In this document: piece by piece, positions 110 through 62,410 of the stretch
Position numbering within the stretch: position 1 is the first letter of the stretch
Layout: each line of letters begins with the position of its first letter
NCBI RefSeq assembly: GCF_021869535.1
Contig: NW_026262679.1
Span: 126,480,001-126,544,000 of the forward strand
Direction of reading: 5' to 3'
DNA: 64,000 nt
Origin: Mytilus californianus
Lineage: Eukaryota
The notes under the pieces: model-generated
The model's database searches: none
Told to the model about the DNA's origin: nothing
The model's input: only the letters and a program-made list of their open reading frames with translations
Made by a program: the position numbers and the translations under genes

Positions 110-967
110 CTTAAAATGTCTTCAGCTTTCAATGAGGTGTGAAATTTTGCTCCGTGTTGAAGGCCTCACTGATGAATACATAAATAATTTCTACAAGTTG
201 AAACAAAACCATTGCATGGTTACAAACTCTGTTGTTGGCATATTTAGATGTTGCGTTCATTCTCACCAGAAATCCTAGACCTACCTCTGATGGAGTGTGC
301 TCGTTATGACTAATTTAAAAAAAAAAATTTATCGAATATATTTACCATAGCTAAATATTGATAACTGTCCCTGAGACATTCTGTTATCTGTTTTCTAATA
401 GATCTTTGGTTCTTACTGTCAAAATTCTGTTCTACCAACTTGTGAACTAGATGTCTGGTTTCAATAACTAGACGAAATGTTAATATAAAGGTATTACAAT
501 ATAGAAATACAAATCTACATTAACTGTTAATATGCAAATTCACAAGGGGGAATATGTTTACAAAATTTACATATAAATTCTTTCTATGTGATAAATCTTT
601 GATTAAATTTTGTTTTGATGGTATAAATGGTGACAACAGATTCTGCAGTCTAGGATGGAATACTAGTGCAAACACATGTTGGTTATTCGCAACAAATCAC
701 AACAAAATAAAACAAAAACAACAATCTTAAGACTATAGAAAAATTACTTTGTTTAACTAGAGGTGAATAGCATCGCACCTGTAAGGATATCGTGTGTAAT
801 ACATTAAAAGAGGTTCGTGTTGCTCTTGTTTTAGTTTTAGGTGTAGTTCTTTGTGCTTTTATGTTTTGAATGTACCGGTAACAGTCTTGTCATGAAAAAG
901 TTGTTTCAATTTCATATTCGGTAAAGTTTCAGGGCTAGAAAATTTACATGTTTTAGTTTTCTATTAT

Positions 968-1160
968 AATAAGAAGATGTGGTATGAGTGCCAATGAGAC
1001 AACTCTCCATTCAAGTCAAAATGTATGAAAAGTTAACAATTATAGGTCTAAGTACGGCCTTCAACACGGAGCTTTGGCTTACACCGAACCGCAAGCTATA
1101 AAGGTCCCCAAAATGACTAGCGTAAAACAATTTAAACAAGAAAACCAACGGTCTAATCTA
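968..1160 (+). mobile_element. Abundant short interspersed repeat (atgtggtatgaNtgccaatgagacaact...acggccttcaac family)
   Basis: The same motif recurs at about 8413-8495 (-), 28440-28605 (-), 52267-52370 (+), 61415-61462 (-) and 62712-62780 (+). Confidence 0.75.
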
Positions 1161-1337
1161 TAGAAAAAAAAAGAGAAACGAGAAACACTTATGCTGTTTG
1201 TTGTGTACTGGTGTTTGTCTTTTGTCGTTTTTCGTTTTTTTGCCATGACACTTTCAGTTTGTTTTCGACTCATGAATATCTCTTTTGTATTTTTCGCCTC
1301 TCTTTTATAATTTCGGATAAGATTTTTAGTCATAAAT

Positions 1338-1374
1338 CTGGGACTATTATACTAAGTTAGTATAATAGTCCCAG
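1338..1374. mobile_element. 37-bp palindromic insertion with 7-bp target-site duplication CATAAAT
   Basis: CTGGGACTATTATACTAA-G-TTAGTATAATAGTCCCAG has perfect 18-bp arms. CATAAAT lies at 1331-1337 and 1375-1381. A sister copy is at 45075-45112. Confidence 0.85.
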
Positions 1375-1905
1375 CATAAATGCACATCCCATAAAAAGGT
1401 TGCCATCCTATAGATACAGGAAAAAAATCAACAAATTCATTTTTTTAATTGTCAATATGTTTGAAATACTAAAATAAATACTATGTTCTTACCCGTTACT
1501 TTCTCATCTGATGTGAAAAAAAATCCACTTGCAGAAAAAGCAAATATTGCTGCGACGCCAACCAAGAGCCCTATCACACCATGCATAGTGTATTTACATA
1601 AACTGGTATCCTATAGAATATCTGAAATTCTTACAAATATACTTGTCTTTAAATCTAAGATTCCAACTTTACAAACAATTCTTATATATTAAGAATTACA
1701 TATTTCTAGAATATAGTTTCGTTACTTTTCTACAATACGCAAAATCGTTCGGAAAATAATAAGGTCAAACTATTAAAGTGGTACATGAGTCATCCCAATG
1801 ATAACTTTTGGACATTGTATCCACACGTACATTACTTGATAATTAAGTAAAACAAATGATATAATCACTTTTAATATTGAAGAGAGGACATCCATTTTTA
1901 TCATC

Positions 1906-4900
1906 ATGAAATCGTTGTTTTTAATAAGCTTGGTAGTTGCAGCATGCAGTGCTATCGATGGTAAGATTTATGTTTTTACATCTATATATAAGAAATGGTA
2001 CTGATAAAATCGAAGATATTGTTCTTCCAATTGGTATGGAAAAAAGTAAAATAACAAAAATACCGAACTCCAAGGGAAATTCAATAAGGAAAGTCCTTTA
2101 TAAAATGGCAAAATCAAAATCTAAAACACATCTAACGAATGGAAAACAACTGTCATATTCCTGACTTGGTACAGGCATTTCCTTATGTAGAAAATGGTGG
2201 ATTTAGCCTGGAATTTTCAATACTCAGTAATATTTTATGTTCCTCTAAGTCTTTAATAAGCGTGGCTCGAACTAGAGTGTCTTGTCTTATAGCCACTGCA
2301 AACGTCTCATGCATGACCAAGCGTTGTCTTATTATATACCAGAATGTATTAGATTCACAAAGACTAAAGAAAACTTCAAGCAGATACAAAGTAATGTGAT
2401 GAGAGCCAATCATAGTCGACTAATTCAAGTTTTTAAATTATACAAAATTTGATTTTGAATTTAGTGCTTGAAATGGTATTGATACGCGGAAATTGTGTTA
2501 TTTCAGAGCATTTGTGAAATCAATTAATAAAAATGCATAAAAAAATCGATACTTAACTGTGTAGACACTATATGATAAAAAGAAATTGTTGTGAAGCTGT
2601 TCTTGGCTTCTTGGATTCTCTATTTTTGACTCTTGCTCCCATTTCACTGTATTCTTTGTATGTTTCATATAGATATGTCTCAAACTTCTTGTTTTAGATG
2701 TTTCAAATGTTCGACAGGATTTTAAAACATCAACAATAAATGCCTTAAACGAACAGATCGTGAAAGAACTCCAGGCCAGCTATATTTACAAAGCATATGT
2801 AAGTAATAATGACGTGACATCACATGTTATATAAATCGAACATCAGCACTTGTGTAGCCTTCTCTACTGGAAAAAATAGTCACATTGAATAACTAAATAA
2901 GAATCATTTCTTTATGACAAGATTCACCATAAATTTACCTTCACAGATAACATTATTGGTACGGGAGTTTTCAGTATCCAAGCTGATTAAACATCTTTTT
3001 GAGCACTTTACTCTCTCCTAACCCGGGACAGTGATACCAGCCTTGGCATTGTTTATTATATTACTTTTGCATATATTTCAGTCCCAGTACTATGCTAGAG
3101 CTGACGTATCCCTGCCTGGGTTTGCCAAGTTTTTCTCTAAAGCGTCCAAGGAAGAGTCGGAGCATGCTGAAAAACTGATGGATTACCTGAATCAGAGAGG
3201 GGGTGAAGTCAAACTACAAGATATAAAGGTATCATCCATTTCTCTTTCGATCTGTTATTTGGTTGAGAATGTTTCATTTCTATTCGTTAATCAACAAATA
3301 CACATGACTTATTATGTAGGGTTTTTTTCGCGCATAGGAAGATTTCCTGCTAAAAATTGTATCAAAAAAACCCAAAACAGTAAAAATTTTGAAAAATTTG
3401 AAAAATGCAAAAAAAAAAAATTCTGTGTCTCTCTGTCTGGCATGGAAAATTTCAAGAAAGATGGACGTTTTTTCTGAAAGTAGTTGTTCCACTAATTGTG
3501 CCATTACATTTAAAAAAAATAGTAATATATTAGACAATTATATAAGACCGTTGATATCTCTTGTTATTTTTGATAATATTTTGTTTTTGTCATTCTGTTT
3601 TATTTAATGTTTAACTCTATGATACTTTCATCTTAGTTGAATGATGTTTGTGATGTGGTGTCAGAAGAACTTGGAAAACATTCTGGTATAGAAAATTCAA
3701 GAACAAAAGCATGTGTAAGTGTAACAGTAAAATGATTCATATAGTAATATTCAGATGATAAATTGGTCTACACAAAAGACAACCTGAAGTTTGTTAAGAA
3801 ATATGCATATTAAGAAACACAGCCGGATTTGATTCACATGGTAGCTTAAAGTAGCATAAATGTGAACACCGATCATATGTGCCTGAAATTTTAAAATAGT
3901 TATTGTTTTTTTCCGAATTTAGAGCCAGCTTATTCTTGTACTTGTGTGATACGAAAGTAATACGACCACTCCTTAAAGACAAGAAGGTGAAAAATCTGCA
4001 CAATTTTACTATCAGCAATATTGAGAGAGAAAAAAATCTATCATCTCATGATCCCTTTTCACTACCATGTGGATTTTACAAGAATGTACACTGATATTGG
4101 AGCCAACAAAAGTACTTTTCATTCACACTCTATATAGTTAATTTGAGAATAATATATACTAAATAGACTATGACTCTAACTCGAAATTAACCATGATGGA
4201 CGCCTAAAAAGTAGATTGAAAGGTCAAACCCAATAATTTAAAATTTCGTGCTTTCAATTTCCAATTTTTGAAGTAGTAATATTTAATCTGCTCCAGCCTT
4301 GATTTTGATTCTAGAAGGACCTTTGCTGTATCTTTTTCACTTTTATCTCAGGTATGAAATGTTTGCTTCATAATATTATTACTTCAATTTGTATTGCAAA
4401 GGGGATGTGGAATAAATACCCCTTTTCCTATTTGGAAAATCAAAAGCAGAAAAAAAACAAACAAAACCAAACAAAATGAATAAGAAAATAAGCAAAATAT
4501 TAAGACAATATATCAGTAAAAAAGAAAGATATACATGGGACACACATACATATTTGTGAAATTGTCCCTAGTTAAGTATCATCAGAACGGAGAATTAAAA
4601 TGCCTGTATAACTTTTTCTTTTTTACAGATGTGTTACTTCATGGCAAAATCTCAAACATGGAATTTGTGTCAGGTAAGACATTTATTCTAATTTATATAT
4701 TGAATTTGTGTTTTTTAATTTAAAATTGGGTTTTATACATATCGGTCAATCTGAAGTTAAGTAATTATTTAAAGTACATGGTTTATCAATGAAAAAAAAT
4801 TGATAACATATTTATCTGTTTTACTATTTCAAGATGATAACAATGTTTTACCTTTGACCATGGAAGTAATATTCAATATTACTTCCATGCTTTGACGGAC

Positions 4901-7895
4901 AACCTTTCATTAAATCTATAATGTACTATATTGTGGCCAGGCAAGGCCCTTACTATAAATTATGCTGTGGACTACTAGTAACTTTCAGTAAGTGCGTATA
5001 CTCCTATATCGGCTGTGGTTGTCGTCGTTTGTGATGTGCCATACTTGTCTTTCGTTTATTGTTTTTATGATAAATCAGGCCGTTTGTTTTCTCTTTGAAT
5101 TGTTTCATATTTCATTATACCGTTAACTTTACGGTATGGTTTCTGCTCAATATTGATGACCGTAAGGTGACACGTAGTTGATTATTTCCTTGTCTTTTTG
5201 TCGTGGGCTGATAGTTGCCTCCTTTACAATCATACCACGTCTCCTTATTGTTACATAGATCGTGAATTTCAGTTGTAGGTTGTTCACATTCTCCAAATCA
5301 ATACAGTCAGCACATAAGGTTGTTCGTTTTTTTTTTAACAAGCAATAGTTGAAAGACCTTTTATCTTGATTATCTTATCTTGTGTTTATTATATCAAACT
5401 TATTACATATATAATGTTTATTTCTATCCTATCCAGTTTGGGTTTACCACATGTTTTATTTTTAGCATACCGAAAGGACGTGTGAGCTTTTACCATCACG
5501 AGATGTCCGTTCGGAGACTTCACATTTTAATCACGTGGTATAAATCCACTTAACCAGTAGAATCAAACTTTGATATTCATTTTTATATTTTTCCGGATCA
5601 TAATTAATCAAAGATGAGCTCTAGAGCCTATTGACAACTGAGACAAGTTTTGAAACCTGTTCTAAAACTACTTGCTTAATAAATGAAAGCAAAACTTAGT
5701 GAAAGAGGCGAAAGATATCAAAGGGACATTCAAACTTATAAGTAAAAAAAAAACTGACAATGCCATGGCAAAAAAAAAAGAAAAAGGCCAAAAAGACAAC
5801 AATACACAAATCACAACATAGAAAACTAAAGACTGAGCAACACGAACCCAAACTACAACCGGGGGTGATCTCAGGTGCTCCGGAAGGGTGATGTTTATGG
5901 CAATTTCATCTATTTCACTGCATGTTTTGAGGTATTCGAATCGTAAAATATTAAAAGTGTAAATCAAGTCAGGAATATGATAGTTGTTTTCCATTCGTTT
6001 GGGCTTTTGATTTTGCCATTTGATAAAGGACTTTCCGTTTTGAATTTTCTTTGGAGTTCGGTATTTTTATTATTTTTATTTCTTTCGAGAATGGGATTTA
6101 AATATTTTCTTTCAGTAACAGGTTTTACTAGAAAATTAGATCGATTATGATGTATTATGTCAATAATGGACACATTTCTGAAACATACTCTGTATACTGT
6201 TAGTTCGTACCATTTTATATTAATTTTTGTTATTTACTAACTATGAATCTAATTGGTAGAGAATTAAGTGGTTATTTAAGCTCGCGAATAATAGGGTGTA
6301 ATTAAGAAAGGAACTGTAATTAAGAAAGGTCGTAACAATAAAAGTTAAACACAATAAATAACCGTTAGTACATTAAACAGATACAATCCGCCCTCCCTCC
6401 GGGCTCATGGTATCTTTTAACGAACTAACGCCTATCTTTTGTATTTCATCCACTTCACCACTCGTTGTCAAATAGCTAAGGTTTTTTTTTAATTAAATGC
6501 ATTGAAAAACTAGTGTGGAGTTGAGAAAAGAGAGAGTTAAATTGATAGACAATTAGTACTTCTACAAATAAATTGGGTAACATTATCTCAATATTCTCAA
6601 GATTATCAAATCAATTTCTTGTTTAAAAGTGGTCGTTTTTTACCCTTTGCATGTACTAGTATTGTACAAAATTCTAAGGGTAAATCTTGTTTTGAGATGA
6701 CCTTTTATTACGTTGAATATTGTAGGATAGAGATGAATGGTACAATGGATTAATGGGAATGGAAGATGCTTTAGTATTAGAAAGATTTGTCAACCAGAAA
6801 TTATTAGATCTCCACAAAGCCACGGAGAGCGATGCTCATGTAGGTAGATCATGTTTGTACAGAATAAGATATTAATTGAACAAAACTAAACCTATAGGTT
6901 TTTTACTTATGGGTAAAGGATCTGGTTTCATAATCTTTATTTTTCTTTTGAAAATTTAAAAGTAAAACTATCATCAAATTTTAAAATAGCCCCAAGATGA
7001 ACCCCACAAATTAAGACAAAAACAAAACAAAGTATAAATAAAAAAAACTCATATAAAACAAAAACAAAAAACATTAAAAACTAAAAGAACAGAACATGCT
7101 CATGAAACTGTTCTCAACAAGTTTAAGTAAGGAAACAGAACTTACATCTTTTTTTTTCAAAATTAACTAAAACTTTTTAGTCCTTGAAATTGTACAGTAT
7201 ATAAATATACACCTCCGTAGTGACTTCTTTGTTTTTACAATTTTTAAAGTATCATATTCTTTTATTTCAAACAATTAAATATTCCTTGCATAAAATTTAA
7301 GTAATAAAGTTAATTTACATCAAGTAAAAAAAAAAAACACACACACAAAAAGGCAACATTATAAGTATATAGTTGTGAAGTCCATAAAGATCACTTTACA
7401 AATTACTTATGAAATATTATATAAAACACTTAATGTAATGTTATACATGTAACACCTAAAGTACTAAGAGATAAGACTTAAATAAACTATTGAATTGAAA
7501 AAAAAATTTTGCAAACTGCCAGAAATAAAGTGTCATGGGATGGAAAACACTCAGATCATTGCTGGTCATTCTTTGAATTTTCTAACTTTTTATAAATACT
7601 TAAGGACCCTTTATAAATTCAAAGTTGAAAGTCTTGGTTGATGAAGTCTTTCTATATCCTCAATGTTGTATATTCTTTTCTAGATAAAAGAACTGTTCAT
7701 AGCAAAATAAGTTTCAAGTTTTCTGTACACGTGCATTCAACAAATATCTCATTTTTTTTTCAGCTTTCCCACGTTCTGGAACATGATTTCTTAGATGAAC
7801 AAGTCCATTCCATAAAGAGCATAGGTGACACAGTGAAACAGTTGAGAAGAGTAAAGAAAGGTCTTGGAGAATATTTATTGGATGAAAAAATGTAA
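1906..7895 (+). CDS. Secreted yolk-type ferritin, 223 aa, 7 coding exons: 1906-1960, 2698-2798, 3082-3228, 3637-3714, 4629-4673, 6726-6839, 7764-7895
   Basis: All introns are GT-AG with matching phases (1,0,0,0,0,0). Protein: [223 protein letters not shown]. Ferritin motifs ELxASYxY, EExEHAEKL, NQRGG, LERxVN and FLDEQV are present, along with a hydrophobic N-terminus and a BC-loop insertion like molluscan yolk ferritin. Confidence 0.93.
5755..5890 (+). mobile_element. Interspersed repeat fragment (…aagactgagcaacacgaacc…gggggtgatctcaggtgctccggaagggt)
   Basis: A GC-richer module typical of a SINE or LINE-end repeat. A degenerate relative lies near 53370-53430 (aatcagctcaggtgctctggaaggg). Confidence 0.5.
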
Positions 7896-8727: not shown

Positions 8728-10584
8728 AAACTAGAGGCTCTCAAGAGCCTGTGTAGCTCACCTGATTCTACTTTGGTTTTGGAAATCATGTAAAAATAGA
8801 TTAAAATCATAACGGATACCCTAATAATGAGTGAGGCCAAATTTGGTTTAATATTGGTCCTGTAATTTGATAAAAAATCCTGGTGGCCATCTTGAACAGT
8901 AAATAGGCAACAAAGTAGCAACACTTCATCAGCACCTCATAAGAAACATTTATGCCATGTTTTGGTTTCATTCCATTCAGTTCACCTCTAGAAGAAGCAT
9001 TTGTATGTATTTCCCATAGGGTCTTATGTTAAAGGAAGTCCCCCCATTGGCGGCCATCATGGATGAAGGATCAGCTTCAAAGTAACAAAACTTAGTCAGC
9101 ACCTCATAAGGAACATTCATGCCATGTTTGGTTTCAATCCATTCAGTATGTGGTTCTCTAAAAGAAGACATTTGTATGTATTGTCCATAGGGTCCCTTGT
9201 TAAACATTGTCCCCCTCTGGCGGCCATCGTGGATGAAGGATCAGCTTCAAAGTAACAACACTTGGTCAGCACCTCAAAAGGAACATGCATGCCATGTTTG
9301 GTTTCATTCCATTCAATGGTTCTCTAAAAGAAAACATTTGTATGTATTTCTCATAGGGTCCTACGTTAAATTAAGTCCCCCCGCTGGCGGCCATCTTGGA
9401 TGATGGATCATCTTCAAAGTAACAACACTTGGTCAGCACCTCATAAGGAACATTCATGTCATGTTTGGTTTCATTCCATTCAGTGGTTCTCTAAAAGAAG
9501 ACGTTTGTATGTATTTCCCATAGGGTCCCATGTTAAACTTAGTCCCCCGCTGGCGGCCATCTTGGATTATGGATCGGCTTCAAAGTAACAACACTTCGAC
9601 AGCACCTCATAAGGAACATTCATGCTATGTTTGGTTTCATTCCATTCAGTGATTCTCTAAAAGAAGACATTTGTATGTATATCTCATAGGGTCCCATGTT
9701 AAATTGAGTCCCCTGCTGGCGGCCATCTTGGATTATGGATCAGCTTCAAAGTAACAACACTCGGTCAGCACCTCATAAGAAACATTCATGCCATGTTTGG
9801 TTTCATTCCATTCAGTGGTTCTCTAAAAGAAGACATTTGTATGTATTTCCCGTAGGGTCCAATGTTAAACTAAGTCCCCTGCTGGCGGCCATCTTGGATT
9901 ATGGATCAGCTTCTAAGTAACAACACTCGGTCAGCACCTCATAAGAAACATTCATGCCATGTTTGGTTTCATTCCATTCAGTGGTTCTCTAAAAGAAGAC
10001 ATTTGTATGTATTTCCCGTAGGGTCCAATGTTAAACTAAGTCCCCTGCTGGCGGCCATCTTGGATTATGGATCGGCTTCATAGTAACAACACTTGGTCAG
10101 CACCTCATAAGGAACATTCATGCCATGTTTGGTTTCATTCCATTCAGTGGTTCTCTAAAAGAAGACATTTGTATGTATTTCCCAAAGGGTCCCATGTTTA
10201 ACTAAGTCCCCCGCTAACGGCCATCTTGGATAATGGATCAGCTTCAAAGTAACAACACTTGGTCAGCACCTCATAAGGAACATTCATGCCATGTTTGGTT
10301 TCATTCCATTCAGTGGTTCTCTAAAAGGAGACATTTGTATGTATTTCCCATAGGGTCCTATGTTAAACAAAGTCCCCCGCTGGCGGCCATCTTGGATGAT
10401 GGATCCGCTACAAAGTAACAACACTTGGTCAGCACCTCATAAGGAACATTCATGCCATGTTTGGTTTCATTCCATTCAGTGGTTCTCTAGAAGAAGTTCA
10501 AAATGTAAAAAGTTAACGACGACGCCGGACGACGGACGCCAAGTGATGAGAAAAGCTCACTTGGCCCTTCGGGCCAGGTGAGCT
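8728..10584 (+). mobile_element. Non-autonomous Helentron-type element (HINE), family 1 copy 1, with about 10 x 166-bp internal satellite
   Basis: 5' end aaactagagg…gctcacctg (subterminal repeat). Then a 166-bp array, a GAC/GGAC microsatellite, and the 3' hairpin gctcacttggcccttcgggccaggtgagct. No TSD. Near-identical to 29453-32500. Confidence 0.85.
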
Positions 10585-20700: not shown

Positions 20701-23700
20701 TTGCATGCTCAATAAAAAAATATTGTTTAACGATGTGATCAATTTTAATATTACTGCATTCAATTTTATAGCTTGAGTCTGTCTGAGAAGTTTTCGGCAA
20801 AACTAAACTATTACTTTTCATTGATTGAATAATATTGTCCTTTGTTTTTTAGTTTGTTTGCGTTTTTTTATTAATATTATTACCATATTTGATTTTAAAA
20901 TTAATGTTTTGATGTTTTAAAATTAAAGGTGCAGCTCCTTTAATCTACCAGATGTCAATAAAATCATCATTGTATTTAAAATTAAAAAAAAAAGAAACTC
21001 ATATGATAATTTATCATTTTTTTTAAACAAGAGGGAAATAACGTTTAAGAAAATATCTCCACCGTGCGACAGCAAAATGTCATACTAAGTCCAAATATTC
21101 AGGCTGACATCTCAGATATTTTCTTCACTGATATAAACGATATATAAAATTGAGAATTGAAACGGGGAAAGTGTCAAAAAGACAATAACTCGTCCAAAGA
21201 GCAGAAAACAGCCCAAGGCTACCAATGGGTCTTCAAAACAGCGAGAAAATCCCACACCCGGAGGCGGGCTTCAGCTTCATGGCCCTAAACAAAAAATAAT
21301 AATATACATATATGCAGTACTTTTAATAATATTTTATATATTTTAATGTTACTACAAACACGTGAACTTGCAAGTTTCAAATTCTTTGACGGTAATTGCT
21401 TTCTTTTTCGGACAGTGTCGTTTTCTTTGCCAAATATACCGTTCGCTCCCCCTTTTTAAAAAAATTCAGACTGTAATCCTTCTTTAATGCTTTCGGGAAA
21501 TTATCAAGATTATATTTAAAATTCTAAATCCCAAAGTCCTTAAAATCCATTAAATATTTTACACTGGACCTTTGGCAAACGACAATCAATTTGGTATAAT
21601 TTCTCGACCCTTCCTTTCTATGAACTGGATAACATTGTCCTTTCATCCAATCTGAACTGTTACGTTTATATTTTCATGAAATAAAACAACAGAAAAAAAG
21701 TTCGTACTGAAGACGGAAAGTATATACACAGAAATATAGTAACGGAATCTAAAGTGTCTGCCCTTGGTACCTAAAACGAATAAGGAGCGTGTTCCAATCC
21801 AATTGAGATTTTGAAAGTCACCCAAGTACCTATACGTTGACATGTGTATATTTATTTATTTTACCTCTCTTTTTACCATGGACAGATATATATCAGACGA
21901 AGACCTTATAGGTTATCAATCATGTTGAAGTACACATACACCATACTGTTATAAGATTCCAATAATTTTAACACTTTGTCAATAGTATAAATGGATGTAA
22001 GTAATCTGAAGATTTTAATGTTGAGACAACGATTATCTCGACTTTGACACCTCGACGAAGTTTAACCTACAAAGTATTGCTGATCAAGGGATTTAGAGCA
22101 GTATGTGCAGGGGGTCCTGAACAAAACTCGCTGCTTTAGTACCAAATTTCTCTATAAAATTGATAATATTAAGAGATTTTGCCAAATTTTGTTATAAGAC
22201 AATATCAAACCAATGTTCTGATCATTTCAATGAAAAAATCACACAAAGTGTTGTATAGATTTTTATAGATAACCATAACCACAAGACATTAATTTTTCAG
22301 ATATGATAATAAATATTTACAGGATTTTTTGGTAAACTGCCGAAATTGCTTCGTTTTGTCATCTTGTCGTCAGCAATAGAACAAGATCGTTTGCCACATA
22401 ATATCTTTTCAAATTATATATTGCTAACGTGGTTGATAAAAATATCAAATAAGGCCTACATCAACTTATCAAAAGGTTTTTTTTCTTTGTCAAATGTGAA
22501 TCGGTATCATTATCACTGGTTCGGGTTGGGATCGCTGCTTGTTTGCAGTTGATTCACATAGTCACAATCCGCATAGAATCCAATGCGTTCATGACGTGAG
22601 TGGTGGAATTTAAGATTAATAATCGTGTAATTTTACTAAAATCTGAATTTCAACAGTCAGCATTGAACTCGCAAGATTACTGCTCAAATCCTAGCCTAAA
22701 AGGACGATGTATGCTACAGAGGTCACTGCAACTTAAGAGGATTTCCAAGATCGGTCGTCTTTTATATTCGAACTGGCATACCCCTCTTGAGCCGCATACC
22801 TGTGTTGGATTATATCACCTACCCGATCAAACACTGACAAAAATTAGGACGCAGACATAAAAATCAATACCAACAAGTATATAGCTATTGAATAATTAAA
22901 TCTTTAATATTTCCTTACAATAACTTATATTCTTTAAAGTAAAGGTAATTATTATATAAAACATAATAAGGTTTAGAAACAATCCTATATATCAACAATA
23001 CTTATCTCTATTCCACAAGGGTTCAACACATTGTTGGCTTGTTTGTCAGTTGCATTAATGTAAACAAATAATCAATATAAAATTGACAGCATCTACAATC
23101 ATTTACACAACACACTCTCTATAATCCACATGGTGCTGGTACTTTCTGTTTGTGAACTTTCCGATTTTAGGGTATTTGGTCTGGTATTAGTAAGTTGTAA
23201 ACATTTTTATGTTAAACTTTATTTACTGCATCGTGTCTCGGTAAATGATACGATTATAGCAATTTTTTAAAATCTGATTTTATATAATATATTGAATTTT
23301 GATGAAGTTAATGGCAGGTTTTATTAACCCAGGAATATTTTATTGATCGAATTCGTAGGTCGACATTAATACGTTTGCTTTGTTCATTTATTTATTTGTT
23401 GTCAATTGTATTAAAAGCTGTTAGCTGTTTTATCAAATAACACATTTAATCTGTTGTTCTAATATGCTGAAAATACGCTTAAATCGTGACCACTATCATT
23501 GATTTCGCTGTGTGCAAGGCGGTGGAGCGTTTCAATTCACCGATTACAATGCAATTTTCAATAAATTCGCTGATATTACAGATATCAATTTCACAAACAT
23601 CTGTTTAGAAATGTAGGCGAGAGGGCGCTGACAATACCGAGCGGACAGACGCACGATGTTTCTATGTCCCTCGGTCCGTATTGCGGCGGGGGACAATTAA

Positions 23701-26700
23701 CAAGATACTGATTTTGAGATAACGGAAACAATACCCTCTCTTTTTTACCCCCCTAGGCGAGGCATACAAATGGAAATATATATCATATCATGGAAGTAGT
23801 CAATATAATACTTTCATGATCATGTCAAAAGTATTTTTAGAAACCAATGACCGTCGATTACTTAGGTTAGTAACTTTGGTGTGTAACAACTTGGTGCTCT
23901 TAAGTCGGTCTTAGTTTAAATAAAATGCTTCGCTGGGCGCAGCTTGATACGACCGCAGAGGTCGAACCCTGAACAGTTGGGGCAAGTATGGACACAACAT
24001 TCAAGCTTGATACAGCTCTGAATTTGGATTGTGATTAAATATTTGACACAGCATAGGTTTCTGACACAGAAAGAATGTGGTCTAAGAACTTCAATTTTTT
24101 TAATTTACCTATTATGGTCCAATGTCCAAAATCAAAATACATGGTTAGATTCAGCATATCAAAGAACCCCATATATTCAATTTTTGTTGAAATCAAACAA
24201 AGTTTAATTTTGGACCCCAACTTGGACAAACTTGAAAACTGGTCCAATAATCAAAAATCTAAACACATGTTTAGATTCAGCATATCAAAGTACCCCAAGA
24301 ATTCAATTTTTGTTAAAATCAAACTAAGTTTAATTTTGGACCCTTTGGACCTTAATGTAGACCAATTTAAAAAACGGGACCCAAAATTAAAAATCTAAAA
24401 ACACGGTTAGATTTGGCATATCAAAGAACCCCAATAATTCAATTTTTGATGAAATCAAACAAAGTTTAATTTGGACCCTTTTGACCTCAATATGAACCAA
24501 TTTGATAGCAGGCCCACAAAATAAAAAATCTAAATACATGGTAAGATTCAGCATATCAAAGAACCCCATATATTCAATTTTTGTTGAAATCAAACAAAGT
24601 TTAATTTTGGACCCCAATTTAGACCAACTTCAAAACTGGGCCAAAAATCTAAAATCTAAATACATGTTTAGATTCAGCATATCAAAGAACCCCATATATT
24701 CAATTTTTGTTGAAATCAAACAAAGTTTAATTTTGGACCCCAACTTGGACCAACTTGAAAACTGGTCCCATAATCAAAAATCTAAACACATGTGTAGATT
24801 CAGCATATCAAAGAACCCCAAAAATTCAATTTTTGTTAAAATCAAACTAAGTTTAATTTTGGACCCTTTGGACCTTAATGTAGACCAATTTAAAAAACGG
24901 GACCCAAAATTAAAAATCTAAATACACGGTTAGATTTGGCATATCAAAGAACCCCAATAATTAAATTTTTGATGAAATCAAACAAAGTTTAATTTTGGAC
25001 CCTTTTGACCTCAATATGAACCAATTTGATAGCAGGCCCACAAATAAAAAATCTAAATACATGGTAAGATTCAGCATATCAAAGAACCCCATATATTCAA
25101 TTTTTGTTGAAATCAAACAAAGTTTAATTTTGGACCCCAATTTGGACCAACTTGAAAACTGGGCCAAAAATCTAAAATCTAAATACATGTTTAGATTCAG
25201 CATATCAAAGAACCCCATATATTCAATTTTTGTTGAAATCAAACAAAGTTTTATTTTGGACCCCAACTTGGACCAACTTGAAAACTGGGCCCATAATCAA
25301 AAATCTAAACACATGTTTAGATTCAGCATATCAAAGAACCCCAAGAATTCAATTTTTGTTAAAATCAAACTAAGTTTAATTTTGGACCCTTTGGACCTTA
25401 ATGTAGACCAATTTATAAACGGGACCCAAAATTAAAAATCTAAATACACGGTTAGATTTGGCATATCAAAGAACCCCAATAATTCAATTTTTGATGAAAT
25501 CAAACAAAGTTTAATTTTGGACCCTTTTGACCTCAATATGAACCAATTTGATAGCGGGTCCACAAATAAAAAATCTAAATACATGGTTAGATTCAGCATA
25601 TCAAAGAACCCCAAGAATTCAATTGTTGATGAAATCAAACAAAGTTTAATTTTGGACCCTTTTGACCTCAATGTGGACAAAGTTGATAACGGGGCCCAAA
25701 AATCAAAAATCTAAATACATGATTAGATTCAGCATATCAAAGAACCCCATATATTCAATTTTTGCTGAAATCAAACAAAGTTTAATTTTGGACCCCGATT
25801 TGGACCAACTTGAAAACTGGGCCCATAATCAAAAATCTAAACACATGTTTAGATTTAGCATATCAAAGTACCCTAAAAATTCAATTTTTGTTAAAATCAA
25901 ACTAAGTTTAATTTTGGACCCTTTTGACCTTAATGTAGACCAATTTGAAAACGGAACCAAAAATTAAGAATCTAAATACCCGGTTAGATTCGGCATATCA
26001 AAGAACCCCAATAATTCAATTTTTGATGAAATCAAACAAAGTTAAATTTTGGACCCTTTGGACCTCAATGTGGACCAATTTAAAAACGGGGCCCAAAATC
26101 CAAAAACTTAATACACGGTTAGATTCAGCATATTAAAGAACCCCAAGAATTCAAGAATAAAACCCCATTGAAATTGATCAAGAAATAAGCAATTTATACG
26201 AAGTATCTTCTTTTGCACAATACTGTGCAATTGAATATTTCTTGCTATTTTGCAATACTGTACAATTGACAATTTCTTGCTATTGCGCAATATTGTGCTA
26301 TTGGATATTTCTTGCTATTGCGCAATACTGTGCAATTGAAGATTTCTTGCTATTGCGCAATACTGTGCAATTGAAGATTTCTTGCAATTGTGCAATACTG
26401 TTCAATTGAAAATTTCTTGCTATTGCACAATACTTATTATATAATAATTTACACATCCTGTTTGGTGTGTATCTCCTACCATATCATTATTATTTGCTTT
26501 TAAATATTAATCAGAAATAACCAACTTAAAATGGAAAATTTTAAAAGAAAAAAAAAATGAAAAAAAAGAAGAAAAAAAAATCCCCCCCCCCCCCCCCAAT
26601 TTTTTGAACCCCCTTATGATTCATCACCCCCAAACTCAATCCCAGCCTTCCCTTTGTGGTATGGTACCTTGCAGTACAATTTCAGAGAGATCCATACACT

Positions 26701-29700: not shown

Positions 29701-32700
29701 TTCAGTGCACCTCTAGAAGAAGCATTTGTATGTATTTCCCATAGGGTCTTATGTTAAAGGAAGTCCCCCCATTGGCGGCCATCATGGATGAAGGATCAGC
29801 TTCAAAGTAACAAAACTTAGTCAGCACCTCATAAGGAACATTCATGCCATGTTTGGTTTCAATCCATTCAGTATGTGGTTCTCTAAAAGAAGACATTTGT
29901 ATGTATCATCCATAGGGTCCTTTGTTAAACATTGTCCCCATCTGGCAGCCATCATGGATGAAGGATCAGCTTCAAAGTAACAACACTTGGTCAGCACCTC
30001 AAAAGGAACATGCATGCCATGTTTGGTTTCATTGCATTCAGTGGTTCTCTAAAAGAAGACATTTGTATGTATTTCCCATAGGGTCCTATATTAAACTAAG
30101 TCCCCCGCTGGCTGCCATCTTGGATGATGGATCAGCTTCAAAGTAACAACACTTGGTCAGCACCTCATAAGGAACATTCATGCCATGTTTGGTTTCATTG
30201 CATTCAGTGGTTCTCTAAAAGAAGACATTTGTATGTATTTCCCATAGGGTCCTATATTAAACTAAGTCCCCCGCTGGCTGCCATCTTGGATGATGGATCA
30301 GCTTCAAAGTAACAACACTTGGTCAGCACCTCATAAGGAACATTCATGCCATGTTTGGTTTCATTGCATTCAGTGGTTCTCTAAAAGAAGACATTTGTAT
30401 GTATTTCCTATAGGGTCCTATGTTAAACTAAGTCCCCCGCTGGCTGCCATCTTGGATGATGGATCAGCTTCAAAGTAACAACACTTGGTCAGCACCTCAT
30501 AAGGAACATTCATGCCATGTTTGGTTTCATTGCATTCAGTGGTTCTCTAAAAGAAGACATTTGTATGTATTTCCCTTAGGGTCCTATGTTAAACTAAGTC
30601 CCTCTCTGGCGGCCATCTTGGATGATGGATCGGCTTCAAAGTAACAACACTTAGTCAAGACCTCATAAGGAACATTCATGCCATGTTTGGTTTCATTCCA
30701 TTCAGTGGTTCTCTAAAAGAAGACATTTGTATGTATTTCCCATAGGGTCCCATGTTAAACTAAGTCCCCCGCTGGCATCCATCTTGGATTATGGATCGGC
30801 TTCAAAGTAACAACACTCGGTCAGCACCTCATAAAGAACATTCATACCATGTTTGGTTTCATTCCATTCAGTGGTTCTCTAAAAGAAGACATTTGTATGT
30901 ATTTCCCTTAGGGTCCTATGTTAAACTAAGTCCCCCGCTGGCGGCCATCTTGGATTATGGATCGGCTTCAAAGTAACAACACTCGGTCAGCACCTCATAA
31001 GAAACATTCATGCCATGTTTGGTTTCATTCCATTCAGTGGTTCTCTAAAAGAAGACATTTGTATGTATTTCCCATAGGGTCCTATGTTAAACTAAGTCCC
31101 CCGCTGGCGGCCATCTTGGATTATGGATCGGCTTCAAAGTAACAACACTCAGTCAGCACCTCATAAGGAACATTCATACCATGTTTGGTTTCATTCCATT
31201 CAGTGGTTCTCTAAAAGAAGACATTTGTATGTATTTCCCATAGGGTCCTATGTTAAACTAAGTCCCCCGCTGGCGGCCATCTTGGATTATGGATCGGCTT
31301 CAAAGTAACAACACTCGGTCAGCACCTCATAAGGAACATTCATACCATGTTTGGTTTCATTCCGTTCAGTGGTTCTATAAAAGAAGACATTTGTATGTAT
31401 TTCCCATTGGGTCCTATGTTAAACTAAGTCCCTCACTGGCGGCCATTTTGGATGATGGAACAGCTACAAAGTAACAACACTTGGTCAGCACCTTGTAAGG
31501 AACATTCATGCTATGTTTTGTTACATTCCATTCAGTGGTTCTCTAAAAGAAGTCATTTGTATGCATTTCCCATAGGGTCCTATGTTAAACTAAGTCCCCT
31601 GCTGGCGGCCATCTTGGATGATGGATCGGCTACAAAGTAACAACACTTGGTCAGCACCTCCTAATGAACATTCATGCTATGTTTTGTTTCATTCCATTCA
31701 GTGGTTCTCTAAAAGAAGTCATTTGTATGCATTTCCCATAGGGTCCTATGTTAAACTAAGTCCCTCACTGGCGGCCATTTTGGATGATGGAACAGCTACA
31801 AAGTAACAACACTTGGTCAGCACCTTGTAAGGAACATTCATGCTATGTTTTGTTTCATTCCATTCAGTGGTTCTCTAAAAGAAGTCATTTGTATGCATTT
31901 CCCATAGGGTCCTATGTTAAACTAAGTCCTCCGCTGGCGGCCATCTTGGATGATGGATCGGCTACAAAGTAACAACACTTGGTCAGCACCTCCTAATGAA
32001 CATTCATGCTATGTTTTGTTTCATTCCATTCAGTGGTTCTCTAAAAGAAGTCATTTGTATGCATTTCCCATAGGGTCCTATGTTAAACTAAGTTCCTCAC
32101 TGGCGGCCATTTTGGATGATGGAACAGCTACAAAGTAACAACACTTGGTCAGCACCTTGTAAGGAACATTCATGCTATGTTTTGTTACATTCCATTCAGT
32201 GGTTCTCTAAAAGAAGTCATTTGTATGCATTTCCCATAGGGTCCTATGTTAAACTAAGTCCCCCGCTGGCGGCCATCTTGGATGATGGATCGGCTACAAA
32301 GTAACAACACTTGGTCAGCACCTCATAAGGAACATTCATGCCATGTTTGGTTTCATTCCATTCAGTGGTTCTCTAGAAGAAGTTCAAAATGTAAAAAGTT
32401 AACGCCGACGACGGACGACGACGGACGACGCCGGACGACGACGGACGACGGACGACAAGTGATGAGAAAAGCTCACTTGGCCCTTCGGGCCAGGTGAGCT
32501 AAAAAAAACGACCTAACCACGAAAATCCAACGTTGACAAATGAAACAGGAAGTCAAAGTCAGACGAACCTTTCCACATGACATGTCAACCTAACAATCAT
32601 ATCATACATCAAATATAGTTGACCTATTGCTTGTCGTATGTGAGAAATGGACTCAAAATGAAAACTTAACGTTAGAGAATATATCATGAAAATTGTGTCA

Positions 32701-43621: not shown

Positions 43622-46600
43622 CCGACGGAATGTAGGATCGCTGTGTCTCGCTTTTGCGACAAAAGTCGCAGGCTCAACAAAAAGCAGTTTCAAAGAAATT
43701 TCTAGTGAAAATAACTTAAATATCAGTTAAACTTTTCACCTGGTTGTAACTCCGATTAAAGGGGAACAAAAGTGAAAATATATGTAGAGTAGTTTGTCTG
43801 TATTTAGTCTTATATGTTGGTTGCTAAGATTAGTCCACTTCAAGATTATGGTATATTTCAGTACACAACAAAACTTAATGTGTATTGAGAAAATAGGCAG
43901 TACAGATGTAGTGGATTAATTAAAACTGTAATCGCCTTAATATGGTTTTAATATTGAACATGGTGACTTTTTCAATGGAGGTATATAAAATTAAATAAAG
44001 TTTGATGGCGAACGATGTAAAATTTGATTATGAGAATCGGATCGCTTTCACTGTTCGGAGATTATGGAGAAGAAATAGAACGACCCCCTAACTGGGAACG
44101 TATAAAATATCTAGCTAAACCTAAAGTAATCAAGAGAAATGGGTCGTTCTATCGAGCACAGTAAGTAAAATAATTCTATTCATAGACTGACAAAAACTTT
44201 CTATCAAAACACCAAAGCATAGTTCAATGTTTCTATCTTTTGTGCACGGAATTTTTAAATGCGATAAAATAAATCGAAACAAATTTAATTTTTCACCGAA
44301 AATACAGAGAGTTTATAGAGTTTCAGCATAATCTGAATAATTTTCGCGTGCGTCATTGTCATTATACATCAGCTTATGTTTCAATAAATAACCTTTAGGG
44401 TTAGGGTAGGTCTGATAAATGCATTGACATATCTCTAGTTCTTGAAAGTCATACTTTGTTTATGGAATCACCAAATGCAACTGATCACGTGGTTTTACTT
44501 GTCATAAGAAACACGAGTTGCCACTGAAGTAACACAATGTTTTCCCCCTTTCATGGCACTTGAGTACACAGTAAGAACAGTAGCTTGTTCGATCTTTAAT
44601 TTTCAGTGTTATATTTTGAAAACGGCTTTCTTCTTTTTTGACAAGATGTCATCCGTCTTTATTCGATCGTATGGCTTGTGATTGCCCTCATTGTATCTTT
44701 TTAATTTCTTTTCGTAACGTTCCGAAAAGGATCATACAATTATCTTTTACCCAGTCAATAGTGTATATATCTTCACACAATTTTTCAGAATGTTCCAGCT
44801 AGATTTTGTTAAATTTTATATTTAAATAGCGGAAGTGGTGATGTTTTGTTCTTCAGCCACAATTCTTGGGAGGGCATCATGCATTGATTTGGTAGCAATT
44901 GGTGTTTATAACCATGCTTACAGAAGTTATATAATTTTATTTTATTATTGTATTTTTTAACTTTGGTTCATAAATATAATTCTTAAGGTAGTTCATTGTT
45001 GTACCCTTTCTACAGCCATATGACTTTTACAAGATTTTCAACTAAATAACCAACTCAATTGTACTTAGGTACAGCTGGGACTATTATACTAACGTTAGTA
45101 TAATAGTTCCAGGGTACAGGGTCAATTTTGGATGGTCGGCTATGGATGATTCTGATGACATTTAGTCCAAATCGACTCACTGACATCAGAAATATTTTTT
45201 TCAAAGTGTGCTACACAGGGAAATTTCACTCATGTGAATTGAGATTCATGTGCATCTCAAGTGAAATTCACGTGAATTATACCTCAAACGAGCTTATACG
45301 TGAAACACGTGAATTAATTTCACGTGAGTTTCATGTGTCTTTCATCGTGAAAATCAATTGAATTTTTGTTCATGTGAATTTTCAAAATAAAGTTATTCAA
45401 AAAACATCTAAATTTTCAAATTTAATTAAAATCATGAAAAATACAATTTTTTTGTGTGAAGTTCATGTGAAATTCATATGAAAATTTGCACATAAGAATC
45501 ATTTGAAATTCACATGAAATTTTCACATGAGTTTCACGTATAAGCTTGTTTGAGGTGAATCTGTGAGATTCATGTGAAATTTGCTTGAATAAATTTGCCT
45601 GTGTACCTGATGAAAAGCTCTGAAAAACCTTCTGGCTTTGACAAGATAAATCAAATTAGGGATTTTATTTTAGACAAAGATTGGTTGTTTTAAAGTTTCA
45701 TTGAAATCCATTTATGTGATAAAATACCAGTTGTGGTTTTCAACTGCATACCTCTAGAATTGGCAATCGCAAACTCTGTTTTGGTATTGAAAATTTGAAA
45801 TCATTTAATCAATTCCATTGGTAATATAAATTAATAGTGGTCCAGAATGACCTTAGTGCTGAAAATTGAATAAAAATCTCATTGAGATGCATAGAGACAA
45901 TGGGACCAACGCACAAAAATCCCTTTTACACCCCTACTGGACATCAGCATTTGACAATTTTAAGTTTCAATTTTGCCACTCTTTTGCAGACCACTGTTTT
46001 ACTACAGCTGTGGACGGTCATCTATGGTATGGGAGCTGAAACCTCTACAGCAACAGGCAAATGTTAGGGTACAAGAACTTTCTAGATCTAAAGAACTACA
46101 TAGAGATCACCGAGAAAACAGGTAGGTTATTGTTTTTGTTTACAGTATTTGTATGTTTGAGCACCCTAGGTAGCACCTCACCTGCTTTAGGAAGCATATA
46201 ACAAGTCTTGAGAATCAATATTATAAATCAAATTAAAGAACATTGTTTCAGTGGTGGATCCATGACTTTGAAAAAGGGGCTCACTTAAAATACAAAGTAT
46301 AGTAATTTAGAGATAACTGTACTGTATTTGAAGCTTTGTGGACGTCCATCGGTAGTTTTACTGTCGCAAATTTAGTTTACCTGGCGACGCGTAGCGGAGA
46401 CAGTAAATGGATATTTGCGACAGTTAAACTACCGATGGACATCAGCAAAGCTTAAATACAATACAGTTATCTCTATTCTAATGCAAAATAAACAAATCAT
46501 TCAATTTTAGTCGTTATTTCAGTGTAAAATTTTCATTAAACGAAAAATCCGCGAAATGATGTTTTCTTCATTGGCGCCATAACTAGGTGACGTCATATGT

Positions 46601-61013: not shown

Positions 61014-61374
61014 CTTCCTGTAAACAAATATGGACATTAAAGGAAAGATTATACTTTGCAACCGTGTAATCTTTGTTTTTGATATTTTTTGTGTTTTTTT
61101 TGTGTTTTTTTTTTGTATACACCAACGCCGACTTACAAATAATGCAAAGTAATTTGATTATAAAAGTGATAAAATAAAAACAATTCATTATATGATAGTT
61201 TTCAACTATCTATCTACATATTTCTGCACTCGATCAGCTTCAACTTTGACTAGTGTGTGTGGCTAAGGATATGTATAGTGATCCTTAGCCATGGCGTGGC
61301 TTATATATATCGTGTACATTTAAAAAATGAAATTCATTTTAAGTAATATGACGTATATAATGATTTACTTTTAC

Positions 61375-61403
61375 CAGAGACATATATATATTATATGTCT
61401 CTG
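61375..61403. mobile_element. 29-bp palindromic insertion with 7-bp TSD CTTTTAC
   Basis: CAGAGACATATATATATTATATGTCTCTG, flanked by CTTTTAC at 61368-61374 and 61404-61410. Confidence 0.75.
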
Positions 61404-62254
61404 CTTTTACAAATTGTGACTTGGATGGAGAGTTGTCTCAAAGGCACTCATACCACATCTTCAAGTCTTGTATCTATTTACATTTGGTGAACAGACAAAT
61501 AAATATCTTTATGGTAAGATCCCGAGGGTTAATGATTTTTAACAAGTGGATTTTGCATGTTTTCTTAACTTATCATCATATTTTTCGATAATCAGATAAA
61601 CTAATTTGCGAGGAATCGTACGCGCCTATAAACTATATACGAAAAATCGAATGCTCCTAGAATCAAATACACGGGAAATTGAATGCTCCTTAGATCAAAA
61701 CTTGAGGCGAATCGCATTCCCCTTAATGATGTTTTCGTTCTTTTCGGGATTTTTTTTCATAATGATTTAGTCATGTGAATTAAAAAAATCTGGAATTTAA
61801 AATTTATACTTTAAAGCAGAAGAGCAACATTCTTGATTATTTTGCCTATTTGCCTATTTTTCTGTATTATTATTTATTTTTTGTCCCGCATTCGCATTGA
61901 ACTTTTTGCCCATTACTCTCATTTCTGTAAACCCCATCCAGACCCTCATATGTTTGATTTTCAAAAAAATTTGCAGGGCGTAGGGCGGAAAAGGGGGCAA
62001 TTATTTTTGAAAATAAAAAAAACGAAAATGAAAGAGGAGACTGACTAACTTCTAGACTATTGCAAGTTGGTTTTTTTTCCTTTTTTATATCGTCCTGCTC
62101 AATAGTTCAGCACTTCCCATCTTACTAGACATCAACCAGCCAATATGTACAGTGTCAATAGTTTTAATCATATTGATTTATCTATTTTCTTTAAAATCAA
62201 AAATATGGAGAAACCTCAGTCCTTTTTCACCGAGCGGAGATAGTAACTTTAATA

Positions 62255-62410
62255 CTATGATATTATTACGTGATTATTTCTGTATTGGCCTTGTTATTGG
62301 TCCGAGGCTTACTGTATTGGCCTGAGGCGAAGCCGAAGGCCAATACAGCTGGCCGAGGACCAATAACAAGGCCAATACAGAAATAATCACGTAATGATAT
62401 CTTTATTAAT
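62255..62410. mobile_element. ~150-bp near-perfect palindrome, the left part of an element extending to about 63250
   Basis: Arms attacgtgattatttctgtattggccttgttattggtcc and ggaccaataacaaggccaatacagaaataatcacgtaat. Related tattggccgag repeats occur at 63140-63185. Confidence 0.8.

What the first reader, a model, noticed from the sequence alone, without database searches (positions are those of the whole stretch)
1331..1381. Ultra-short (37-38 bp) palindrome that looks mobile: a 'TIR-only' element with 7-bp TSDs
Seen: a perfect palindrome CTGGGACTATTATACTAA(C)GTTAGTATAATAGTCCCAG is flanked here by the 7-bp direct repeat CATAAAT. The same palindrome recurs at 45075-45112 with a different 7-bp direct repeat. 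Known: TSDs mark staggered-cut transposition, and human MADE1 (about 80 bp, two fused mariner TIRs) is the classic minimal MITE; 7-bp TSDs are uncommon (P-element-like, Dada). Inference: this is a unit half the size of MADE1, probably too short to bend into a normal transpososome. It may insert as a TIR-TIR junction or hairpin intermediate. This copy lies about 530 bp upstream of the ferritin ATG.
Basis: partly seen in the sequence, partly recalled or inferred. Interest (0 to 1): 0.8.

Follow-up and report, generated by a model that had tools for sequence, protein, structure and literature searches.

The report
Transposon excision scars, not mini-transposons
The 37-38-bp palindromes with 7-bp flanking repeats are real and came from insertions, but they are most likely scars left when P-element-type jumping genes cut themselves out of this mussel genome, not the smallest known mobile element.

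Summary
The palindrome lies at 1338-1374 (37 bp, repeat CATAAAT) and 45075-45112 (38 bp, repeat GGTACAG). A scan of the window found only 7-bp flanking repeats enriched. It also found three more tiny palindromes from two other end-sequence families: 4859-4889, 23789-23818 and 61375-61403. Nothing longer than 38 bp carries such ends.

Three other Mytilus assemblies show empty sites with a single target copy at 1338 and 4859. A closer species lacks exactly 38 bp at 4859. So the flanking repeats are true target-site duplications.

Contigs from public runs show hundreds of copies of the CTGGGAC palindrome. Its centre varies: 38, 37, 35 and 32 bp.

The architecture is a duplication, at most about 19 nt of each end, a variable junction, then the duplication again. 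This matches end-joined donor sites left after P-element excision in Drosophila (17+17 nt between 8-bp duplications). P-superfamily members such as Galileo make 7-bp duplications.

I therefore read these as P-type excision footprints (about 0.75). No parent element could be searched for, because no tool reaches this genome.

First-stage notes on other windows of this genome list similar palindromes. None of those had been followed up.

The parts
1331..1337 (.). Left copy of the 7-bp target-site duplication CATAAAT (site 1)
   Evidence: Three other Mytilus assemblies have a single diverged copy (TTTCAAAT) and no palindrome here.
1338..1374 (.). 37-bp palindrome, 18 + G + 18 (equivalently 18 + 19 nt of the CTGGGACTATTATACTAAC end). 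Read as an excision footprint.
   Evidence: Contig depth here is about 34,600 against about 41 for single-copy sequence, and the centre varies among copies.
1375..1381 (.). Right copy of the 7-bp target-site duplication CATAAAT (site 1)
45068..45074 (.). Left copy of the 7-bp duplication GGTACAG (site 2)
45075..45112 (.). 38-bp palindrome of the same family, 19 + 19 with centre CG and one arm mismatch (C to T in the right arm)
   Evidence: This '+C' form makes up about 6-10% of the family's contig depth in all four runs.
45113..45119 (.). Right copy of the 7-bp duplication GGTACAG (site 2)
4852..4896 (.). Second family: CTTTGAC, then the 31-bp palindrome CATGGAAGTAATATT-C-AATATTACTTCCATG (4859-4889), then CTTTGAC. 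It lies in a ferritin intron.
   Evidence: A contig of the related species B skips exactly 4852-4889, which is 38 bp (record 13). Three further Mytilus assemblies have a single CTTTGAC.
23782..23825 (.). Older, decayed copy of the CATGG family: a 30-bp palindrome at 23789-23818 with a different junction (about 12 + C + 17). Its duplication ATCATAT/ATCATGT matches at 6 of 7 positions.
61368..61410 (.). Third family: CTTTTAC, then the 29-bp palindrome CAGAGACATATA-TATAT-TATATGTCTCTG (61375-61403), then CTTTTAC

Best explanation
These palindromes are excision footprints of cut-and-paste transposons with P-element-type cleavage. The proposed sequence is as follows. A longer element with ends CTGGGACTATTATACTAAC... 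inserted and made a 7-bp target duplication. Later its transposase cut it out. The 3' cut fell at the element's tip. The 5' cut fell about 19 nt inside each terminal inverted repeat. Each flank therefore kept the duplication plus a roughly 19-nt 3' tail of end sequence. The cell joined the two tails by non-homologous or microhomology-mediated end joining and trimmed 0-3 nt from each. The result is duplication, at most 19 nt, at most 19 nt, duplication: a 32-38-bp palindrome that cannot leave again.

Shown here: the architecture, the 7-bp duplications, the empty ancestral sites, the many copies, the variable centres, and the same size class in three unrelated end-sequence families. Inferred: that the parent belongs to the P superfamily, that the cut is about 19 nt inside the repeat, and that each copy is an independent excision event. 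Two same-family pairs in one 64-kb window suggest that one element hopped locally and left a trail of scars.
For: 1. Real insertion-type events. Empty orthologous sites with a single target copy exist at 1338 and at 4859. A contig of a closer species lacks exactly the 31-bp palindrome plus one 7-bp repeat (record 13).

2. A size ruler that holds across families. The window holds five palindromes of 29-38 bp with 7-bp duplications, from three unrelated end sequences. No element with 7-bp duplications is longer than 38 bp, searching up to 8 kb. No other duplication length is enriched for this architecture.

3. Junction heterogeneity confined to the centre. The window copies are 18+19 and 19+19. 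Genome-wide, the 38-, 35- and 32-bp forms each make up about 6-18% of contig depth in four runs of two species. The two CATGG copies are 15+1+15 and about 12+1+17.

4. A known mechanism gives this product. P transposase cuts 17 nt inside the inverted repeat (PMC7776569). Sequenced end-joined donors in Drosophila read 8-bp duplication, 17 nt, 17 nt, 8-bp duplication, with small trims or insertions (PMC2895639, Table 1).

5. P-superfamily members Galileo and 1360 exist, and Galileo makes 7-bp duplications (PMC4168063).

6. D. melanogaster P elements need 138 and 216 bp of their ends to move (PMC1562414). A 37-bp unit is far below that.

7. Inference from geometry. If the cuts fall about 19 nt inside each end, a 38-bp unit has no duplex left to excise.

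8. Same-family clustering. There are two CTGGGAC copies 44 kb apart and two CATGG copies 19 kb apart. The families have only some hundreds and some tens to 170 copies in a genome of about 1.65 Gb (PMC9710001). [quoted passage not shown]
Against: No parent element with these ends was found. No tool here can search this genome, and the window holds none.

The arms kept are 19 nt, longer than the 17 nt of Drosophila P. The cut position would have to differ.

Hundreds of copies per family need hundreds of fixed insertion-then-excision events, if these are all independent.

Centre variation could also arise after insertion, because palindrome centres are unstable.

One of the three families starts CTGGG rather than the CA of the other two. 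I could not verify any terminal motif of the P superfamily in the literature.
Confidence: 0.75

Rival explanations
1. One reading: the 37-38-bp palindrome is itself a mobile 'TIR-only' micro-MITE. A transposase supplied in trans recognises its two fused ends. It amplified to hundreds of copies, each insertion making its own 7-bp duplication.
For: There are hundreds of copies. Every window copy has a clean 7-bp duplication. Empty sites exist in relatives. One junction form may predominate, since the listed variants sum to only about a third of contig depth.
Against: Empty sites are predicted equally by the footprint model. Three unrelated end-sequence families all give units of only 29-38 bp and nothing longer in the window. 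That points to a mechanistic ruler rather than to three independent minimal elements. Variation is concentrated at the junction. Known P elements need more than 100 bp per end (PMC1562414). A 37-bp duplex is far below the DNA persistence length of about 150 bp (established knowledge), so it could not bring its two ends together. With P-type staggered cuts nothing double-stranded would be released.
Confidence: 0.1
2. These are remnants of longer copies collapsed in place by another route. Candidates are interrupted gap repair after excision, or deletion at the centre of a foldback or MITE copy. Alternatively they are footprints of a non-P superfamily that also makes 7-bp duplications. On this view the roughly 19-nt limit does not report a staggered cut.
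For: It predicts the same features: retained duplication, variable centre and no mobility. No P-like transposase or parent was seen, so the superfamily is inferred only from the duplication length and the architecture.
Against: Interrupted repair synthesis and random internal deletion should give a broad range of sizes. The window shows only 29-38 bp and nothing between 39 bp and 8 kb with 7-bp duplications. Among characterised cut-and-paste transposases, an atypically long staggered cut of this kind is described only for P (PMC7776569).
Confidence: 0.12
3. Chance palindromes or an assembly artefact.
For: None beyond the AT-rich, repeat-rich context.
Against: There were 0 comparable hits in 20 shuffles and 0.05 expected arm matches. 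The palindrome is present in contigs of three independent individuals from three studies. The orthologous sites are precisely empty.
Confidence: 0.01

Closest known systems
End-joined donor sites ('footprints') left after Drosophila P-element excision
   Same: The layout is the same: intact target duplication, a short stretch of each inverted repeat, then the duplication again. Junctions are trimmed by a few nucleotides or joined at microhomology (PMC2895639, Table 1; PMC7776569).
   Different: The duplication is 7 bp, not 8. Up to 19 nt are kept per side, not 17. These are natural alleles present in all three individuals checked in a mollusc, and they are present in hundreds of copies per family rather than being laboratory events. 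The parent element is unknown.
Galileo and 1360, the other members of the P superfamily
   Same: Galileo makes 7-bp target duplications and belongs to a superfamily that moves by cut-and-paste (PMC4168063).
   Different: Galileo has very long foldback ends and a target consensus of GTANTAC. The five targets here show no such consensus. No transposase was available here for comparison.
MITEs made of fused ends, such as human MADE1 (about 80 bp, from memory) and Anopheles P-MITEs
   Same: They consist of inverted repeats flanked by target duplications, occur in many copies, and are non-coding.
   Different: MITEs carry internal or subterminal sequence and are mobilised as units. P-MITEs keep somewhat under 100 bp of P sequence at each end (PMC1562414). 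The units here are 29-38 bp, consist only of the outer 19 nt or less of each end, and vary at the junction.

Membership tests
P-type excision footprint | Both copies of the target duplication are retained, with the length typical of the superfamily (7-8 bp) | tested here: met
   The window holds four exact 7-bp duplications and one that matches at 6 of 7 positions. A 7-bp duplication is documented for Galileo in the P superfamily (PMC4168063).
P-type excision footprint | Only the outer part of each inverted repeat is kept, up to the length of the staggered cut (17 nt in Drosophila P) | tested here: inconclusive
   Arms are 12-19 nt in all five copies, and the largest form genome-wide is 19+19. 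A cap exists, but it lies at 19 nt rather than 17. The cut position of the unknown transposase cannot be measured here.
P-type excision footprint | The junction differs between independent events (trimming, microhomology, small insertions) | tested here: met
   The window copies are 37 and 38 bp. The 38-, 35- and 32-bp forms appear in four runs. The CATGG copies are 15+1+15 and about 12+1+17.
P-type excision footprint | The ancestral site is empty, with a single copy of the target | tested here: met
   Site 1338: alignment A1. Site 4859: (record 13).
P-type excision footprint | A longer parent element exists with the same ends and a P/THAP9-like transposase | not testable with these tools
   No tool searches this genome. 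The window holds none. Public pattern scans gave only chance hits.
MITE (mobile miniature inverted-repeat element) | A unit with terminal inverted repeats and target duplications, present in many copies at unrelated sites | tested here: met
MITE (mobile miniature inverted-repeat element) | A family-specific internal or subterminal sequence and a stable unit length, showing that the unit is copied as a whole | tested here: not met
   There is no internal sequence. The length varies at the centre: 32, 35, 37 and 38 bp.
MITE (mobile miniature inverted-repeat element) | Evidence that the short unit itself transposes | not testable with these tools
   Presence or absence between species is predicted equally by insertion followed by excision.

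The most novel reading that the evidence does not exclude
The 37-38-bp palindromes are themselves substrates of a P-like transposase. They would be inserted as TIR-only units, or as two separately cleaved ends that are then joined. That would make them the shortest eukaryotic transposable element known and a minimal model of a transpososome.
Probability: 0.08. Interest if true: 0.85.

Novelty: new member of a known kind. Interest (0 to 1): 0.45.

Why it matters
If these are footprints, they are a fossil record of transposon departures. Most transposon superfamilies leave scars too small to recognise. A long staggered cut leaves a 30-40-bp scar that can be counted, dated and assigned to a family.

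This would allow three things from sequence alone. Excision rates in a wild animal genome could be estimated. The cut position of an uncharacterised transposase could be read off: about 19 nt here against 17 nt in Drosophila. Local hopping could be detected as trails of same-family scars.

At five per 64 kb, a crude extrapolation to a 1.65-Gb genome gives on the order of 100,000 such scars. Repeat annotators would misfile these as tiny MITEs.

I found no evidence that the copy 530 bp upstream of the ferritin start codon has any function.

Tried and rejected
1. I looked for longer elements with the same ends in the window, using pattern searches with 2-3 mismatches and a scan for inverted-repeat pairs with 5-9-bp duplications up to 8 kb apart. 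None was found.

2. I scanned public collections for the arm. Metagenome contigs gave 7 hits, none of which continues into the palindrome, so all are chance. Bacterial and archaeal genomes gave 0. Viral contigs gave 1 chance hit, with the same flanking sequence as one metagenome hit, L006.

3. I looked for a transposase in the window. The seven ORFs of 110 aa or more include one that is a ferritin exon read into its intron. The other six have no significant Pfam match.

4. An apparent 2-kb element with a 7-bp duplication in L008 (22473-24519) turned out to be a false call. Its inverted repeats run further outward.

5. My recollection of a P-superfamily terminal motif could not be confirmed by a literature search. 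I do not use it as evidence.

6. At site 1 in the related species B, the contig aligns only from 1376 and has 81 unaligned letters before that (record 9). I could not tell whether the site is empty there.

7. I did not obtain orthologous loci for the copies at 23789, 45075 and 61375. The fetched loci end at about window position 19,200.

8. Paralogous empty sites inside the window: none exists.

Full report
**What is there**

The window is AT-rich animal DNA with 30-41% G+C. It carries a secreted ferritin gene whose first exon starts at 1908.

Copy 1 lies at 1338-1374 and is 37 bp, 18 + G + 18, with no mismatch. It sits between two copies of CATAAAT at 1331-1337 and 1375-1381. Copy 2 lies at 45075-45112 and is 38 bp, 19 + 19, with one mismatch. 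It sits between two copies of GGTACAG at 45068-45074 and 45113-45119. The 18-nt arm occurs four times against 0.05 expected by chance. The flanks of the two copies are unrelated. The two copies differ by one base at the centre.

**More than one family**

I scanned the window for short palindromes bounded by direct repeats of 3 to 11 bp. Hits of this type (unrelated flanks, 10 exact terminal bases) occurred only at 7 bp. There were three exact hits against none in 20 shuffles, and none at 5, 6 or 8-11 bp. With one mismatch allowed there were four.

The additional ones belong to other end sequences:
- CATGGAAGTAATATT-C-AATATTACTTCCATG at 4859-4889 (31 bp, duplication CTTTGAC).
- CAGAGACATATA-TATAT-TATATGTCTCTG at 61375-61403 (29 bp, duplication CTTTTAC).
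- A decayed fifth copy at 23789-23818. It belongs to the CATGG family, has a different junction (about 12 + C + 17), and its duplication matches at 6 of 7 positions.

No pair of inverted ends with a 7-bp duplication is longer than 38 bp, searching up to 8 kb.

**The duplications are real**

I fetched the orthologous ferritin locus from three other Mytilus assemblies (L008-L010). They are collinear with the window at 75-91% nucleotide identity.

At site 1 they read ...CAGAGTTTCAAATGCGC..., that is, one diverged copy of the target and no palindrome (alignment A1). At 4859 they have a single CTTTGAC.

Contigs of public runs gave a closer comparison. In a related species (organism B, about 93% identical here) one contig runs to 4851 and continues at 4890 without a break. 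It lacks exactly the 31-bp palindrome plus one 7-bp repeat (record 13). Three individuals of the window's own species label, from three studies, carry both palindromes (table 8).

**Copy number and centre variation**

Contig depth across 1353-1356 is about 34,600 in run X1, against about 41 for neighbouring single-copy sequence. Contigs break inside the palindrome. Core and flank contigs are summed in this depth, so I estimate some 280-840 copies.

The CATGG palindrome has a depth of about 7,000, which gives some 60-170 copies.

The listed variants of the CTGGGAC palindrome all lie at the centre:
- +C behind 1355, giving the 38-bp 19+19 form of copy 2.
- -2 at 1355 or at 1356, giving 35 bp. 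These are the same form seen in the two orientations.
- -5 at 1353, giving 32 bp (16+16, centre CTAG).

Each makes up about 6-18% of depth in all four runs, in both species (table 4).

**What it most likely is**

P-element transposase cuts the 3' strand at the element's tip and the 5' strand 17 nt inside the inverted repeat (PMC7776569). Each donor flank therefore keeps the target duplication plus a 17-nt 3' tail.

Sequenced end-joining products in Drosophila are written as acccagac-CATGATGAAATAACATA / TATGTTATTTCATCATG-acccagac. They show trims of a few nucleotides, microhomology joins or small insertions (PMC2895639, Table 1).

The mussel palindromes have the same architecture, with a 7-bp duplication and up to 19 nt per side. 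Seven-bp duplications are made by Galileo, and most Galileo copies have them (PMC4168063).

The observed series of 38, 37, 35 and 32 bp is what trimming 0-3 nt from two roughly 19-nt tails would give. The 32-bp form can be read as two 17-nt tails annealed at the terminal TA.

The same 29-38-bp size class recurs in three unrelated end families, and no longer relatives are present. This argues for a mechanistic ruler, the staggered cut, rather than three separately evolved minimal elements.

**Why the unit probably does not move**

D. melanogaster P elements need 138 and 216 bp of their ends to transpose, and Anopheles P-MITEs keep somewhat under 100 bp per end (PMC1562414). By geometry, which is my inference, cuts about 19 nt inside each end of a 38-bp unit would meet at the centre and release no duplex. 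The scar is a dead end for the transposase that made it.

**Clustering**

The genome is about 1.65 Gb if it is the California mussel, as earlier notes of this scan say (size from PMC9710001). On that basis the chance of a second family member falling in the same 64-kb window is about N x 3.9e-5. That gives 0.01-0.03 for CTGGGAC and 0.002-0.007 for CATGG. Both families nevertheless have two copies here.

Old, decayed copies are undercounted, so these figures are rough. [quoted passage not shown] On that view one element hopped locally and left a scar at each stop.

**Weak points**

- I could not find the parent element. No tool here searches this genome. Pattern scans of metagenome, prokaryote and viral collections gave only chance hits. 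The window encodes no transposase.
- The 19-nt retention differs from the 17 nt of Drosophila.
- Palindrome centres are unstable, so some centre variation could have arisen after formation.
- Presence or absence between species does not separate 'inserted as a 37-mer' from 'inserted long, then excised'.

I therefore put about 0.75 on P-type footprints. I put about 0.12 on other in-place collapse routes or a non-P parent, and about 0.1 on a truly mobile TIR-only unit.

**Earlier notes of this scan**

First-stage notes on other windows of this genome list the same kind of object. Their titles mention arm splits of 16+17, 17+17 and 21+17 and unit lengths of 28-40 bp. They also mention CAGAGACATATA palindromes in clusters. 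None of these had been followed up. The titles gave me the footprint lead. I tested it here only on this window's copies.

**Comparison with known things, and novelty**

The mechanism is known from laboratory P-element excision. What is new is the setting. These are natural alleles, present in all three individuals checked, in a mollusc. They occur in several families and in hundreds of copies each, with a 7-bp duplication and a cap of about 19 nt. My literature searches found no paper describing genome-wide P-type scars or micro-palindromes of this kind in bivalves. That search is limited to open-access text.

Noticed in passing
window 23782-23825: A decayed fifth micro-palindrome of the CATGG family, 30 bp long. 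Its 7-bp duplication matches at 6 of 7 positions, and its junction differs from the copy at 4859. It lies 19 kb from that copy.
   Followed up: partly
window 801-1200, 2001-2200 and 5601-6000: Segments of an extremely abundant repeat. Summed contig depth is in the millions against about 41 for single-copy sequence, and copies lie in both orientations (joints 968/2040 on opposite strands). The left flank of site 1 (about 1198-1314) is also repeated, with depth about 55,000. It is already present at the orthologous locus of other Mytilus species.
   Followed up: partly
window 10554-10584 and 32470-32500: The same 31-bp G+C-rich palindrome, AGCTCACTTGGCCCTTCGGGCCAGGTGAGCT, occurs twice, each time next to AGAAA or AAAAA. 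It is probably a hairpin that is part of another repeat family.
   Followed up: no
window 62259-62401 and 46328-46456: Two longer near-perfect palindromes, with arms of 70 nt (89% complementary) and 63 nt (78%) and 3-nt centres. The first has GGCC on both sides of an inner 79-bp core. They are different in kind from the micro-palindromes with 7-bp duplications.
   Followed up: no
window 47635-47749: A 115-bp unit with inverted ends and an exact 6-bp flanking repeat, AATATT. It encloses an 86-bp palindrome-like core (47649-47734). It looks like a small MITE of another family.
   Followed up: no
L008 18783-31637: One Mytilus assembly (GCA_965363235.1) has roughly 13 kb more sequence in the ferritin gene than the other two assemblies. 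This stretch includes an element of about 2.1 kb with inverted repeats of about 270 bp, at 22445-24547.
   Followed up: partly
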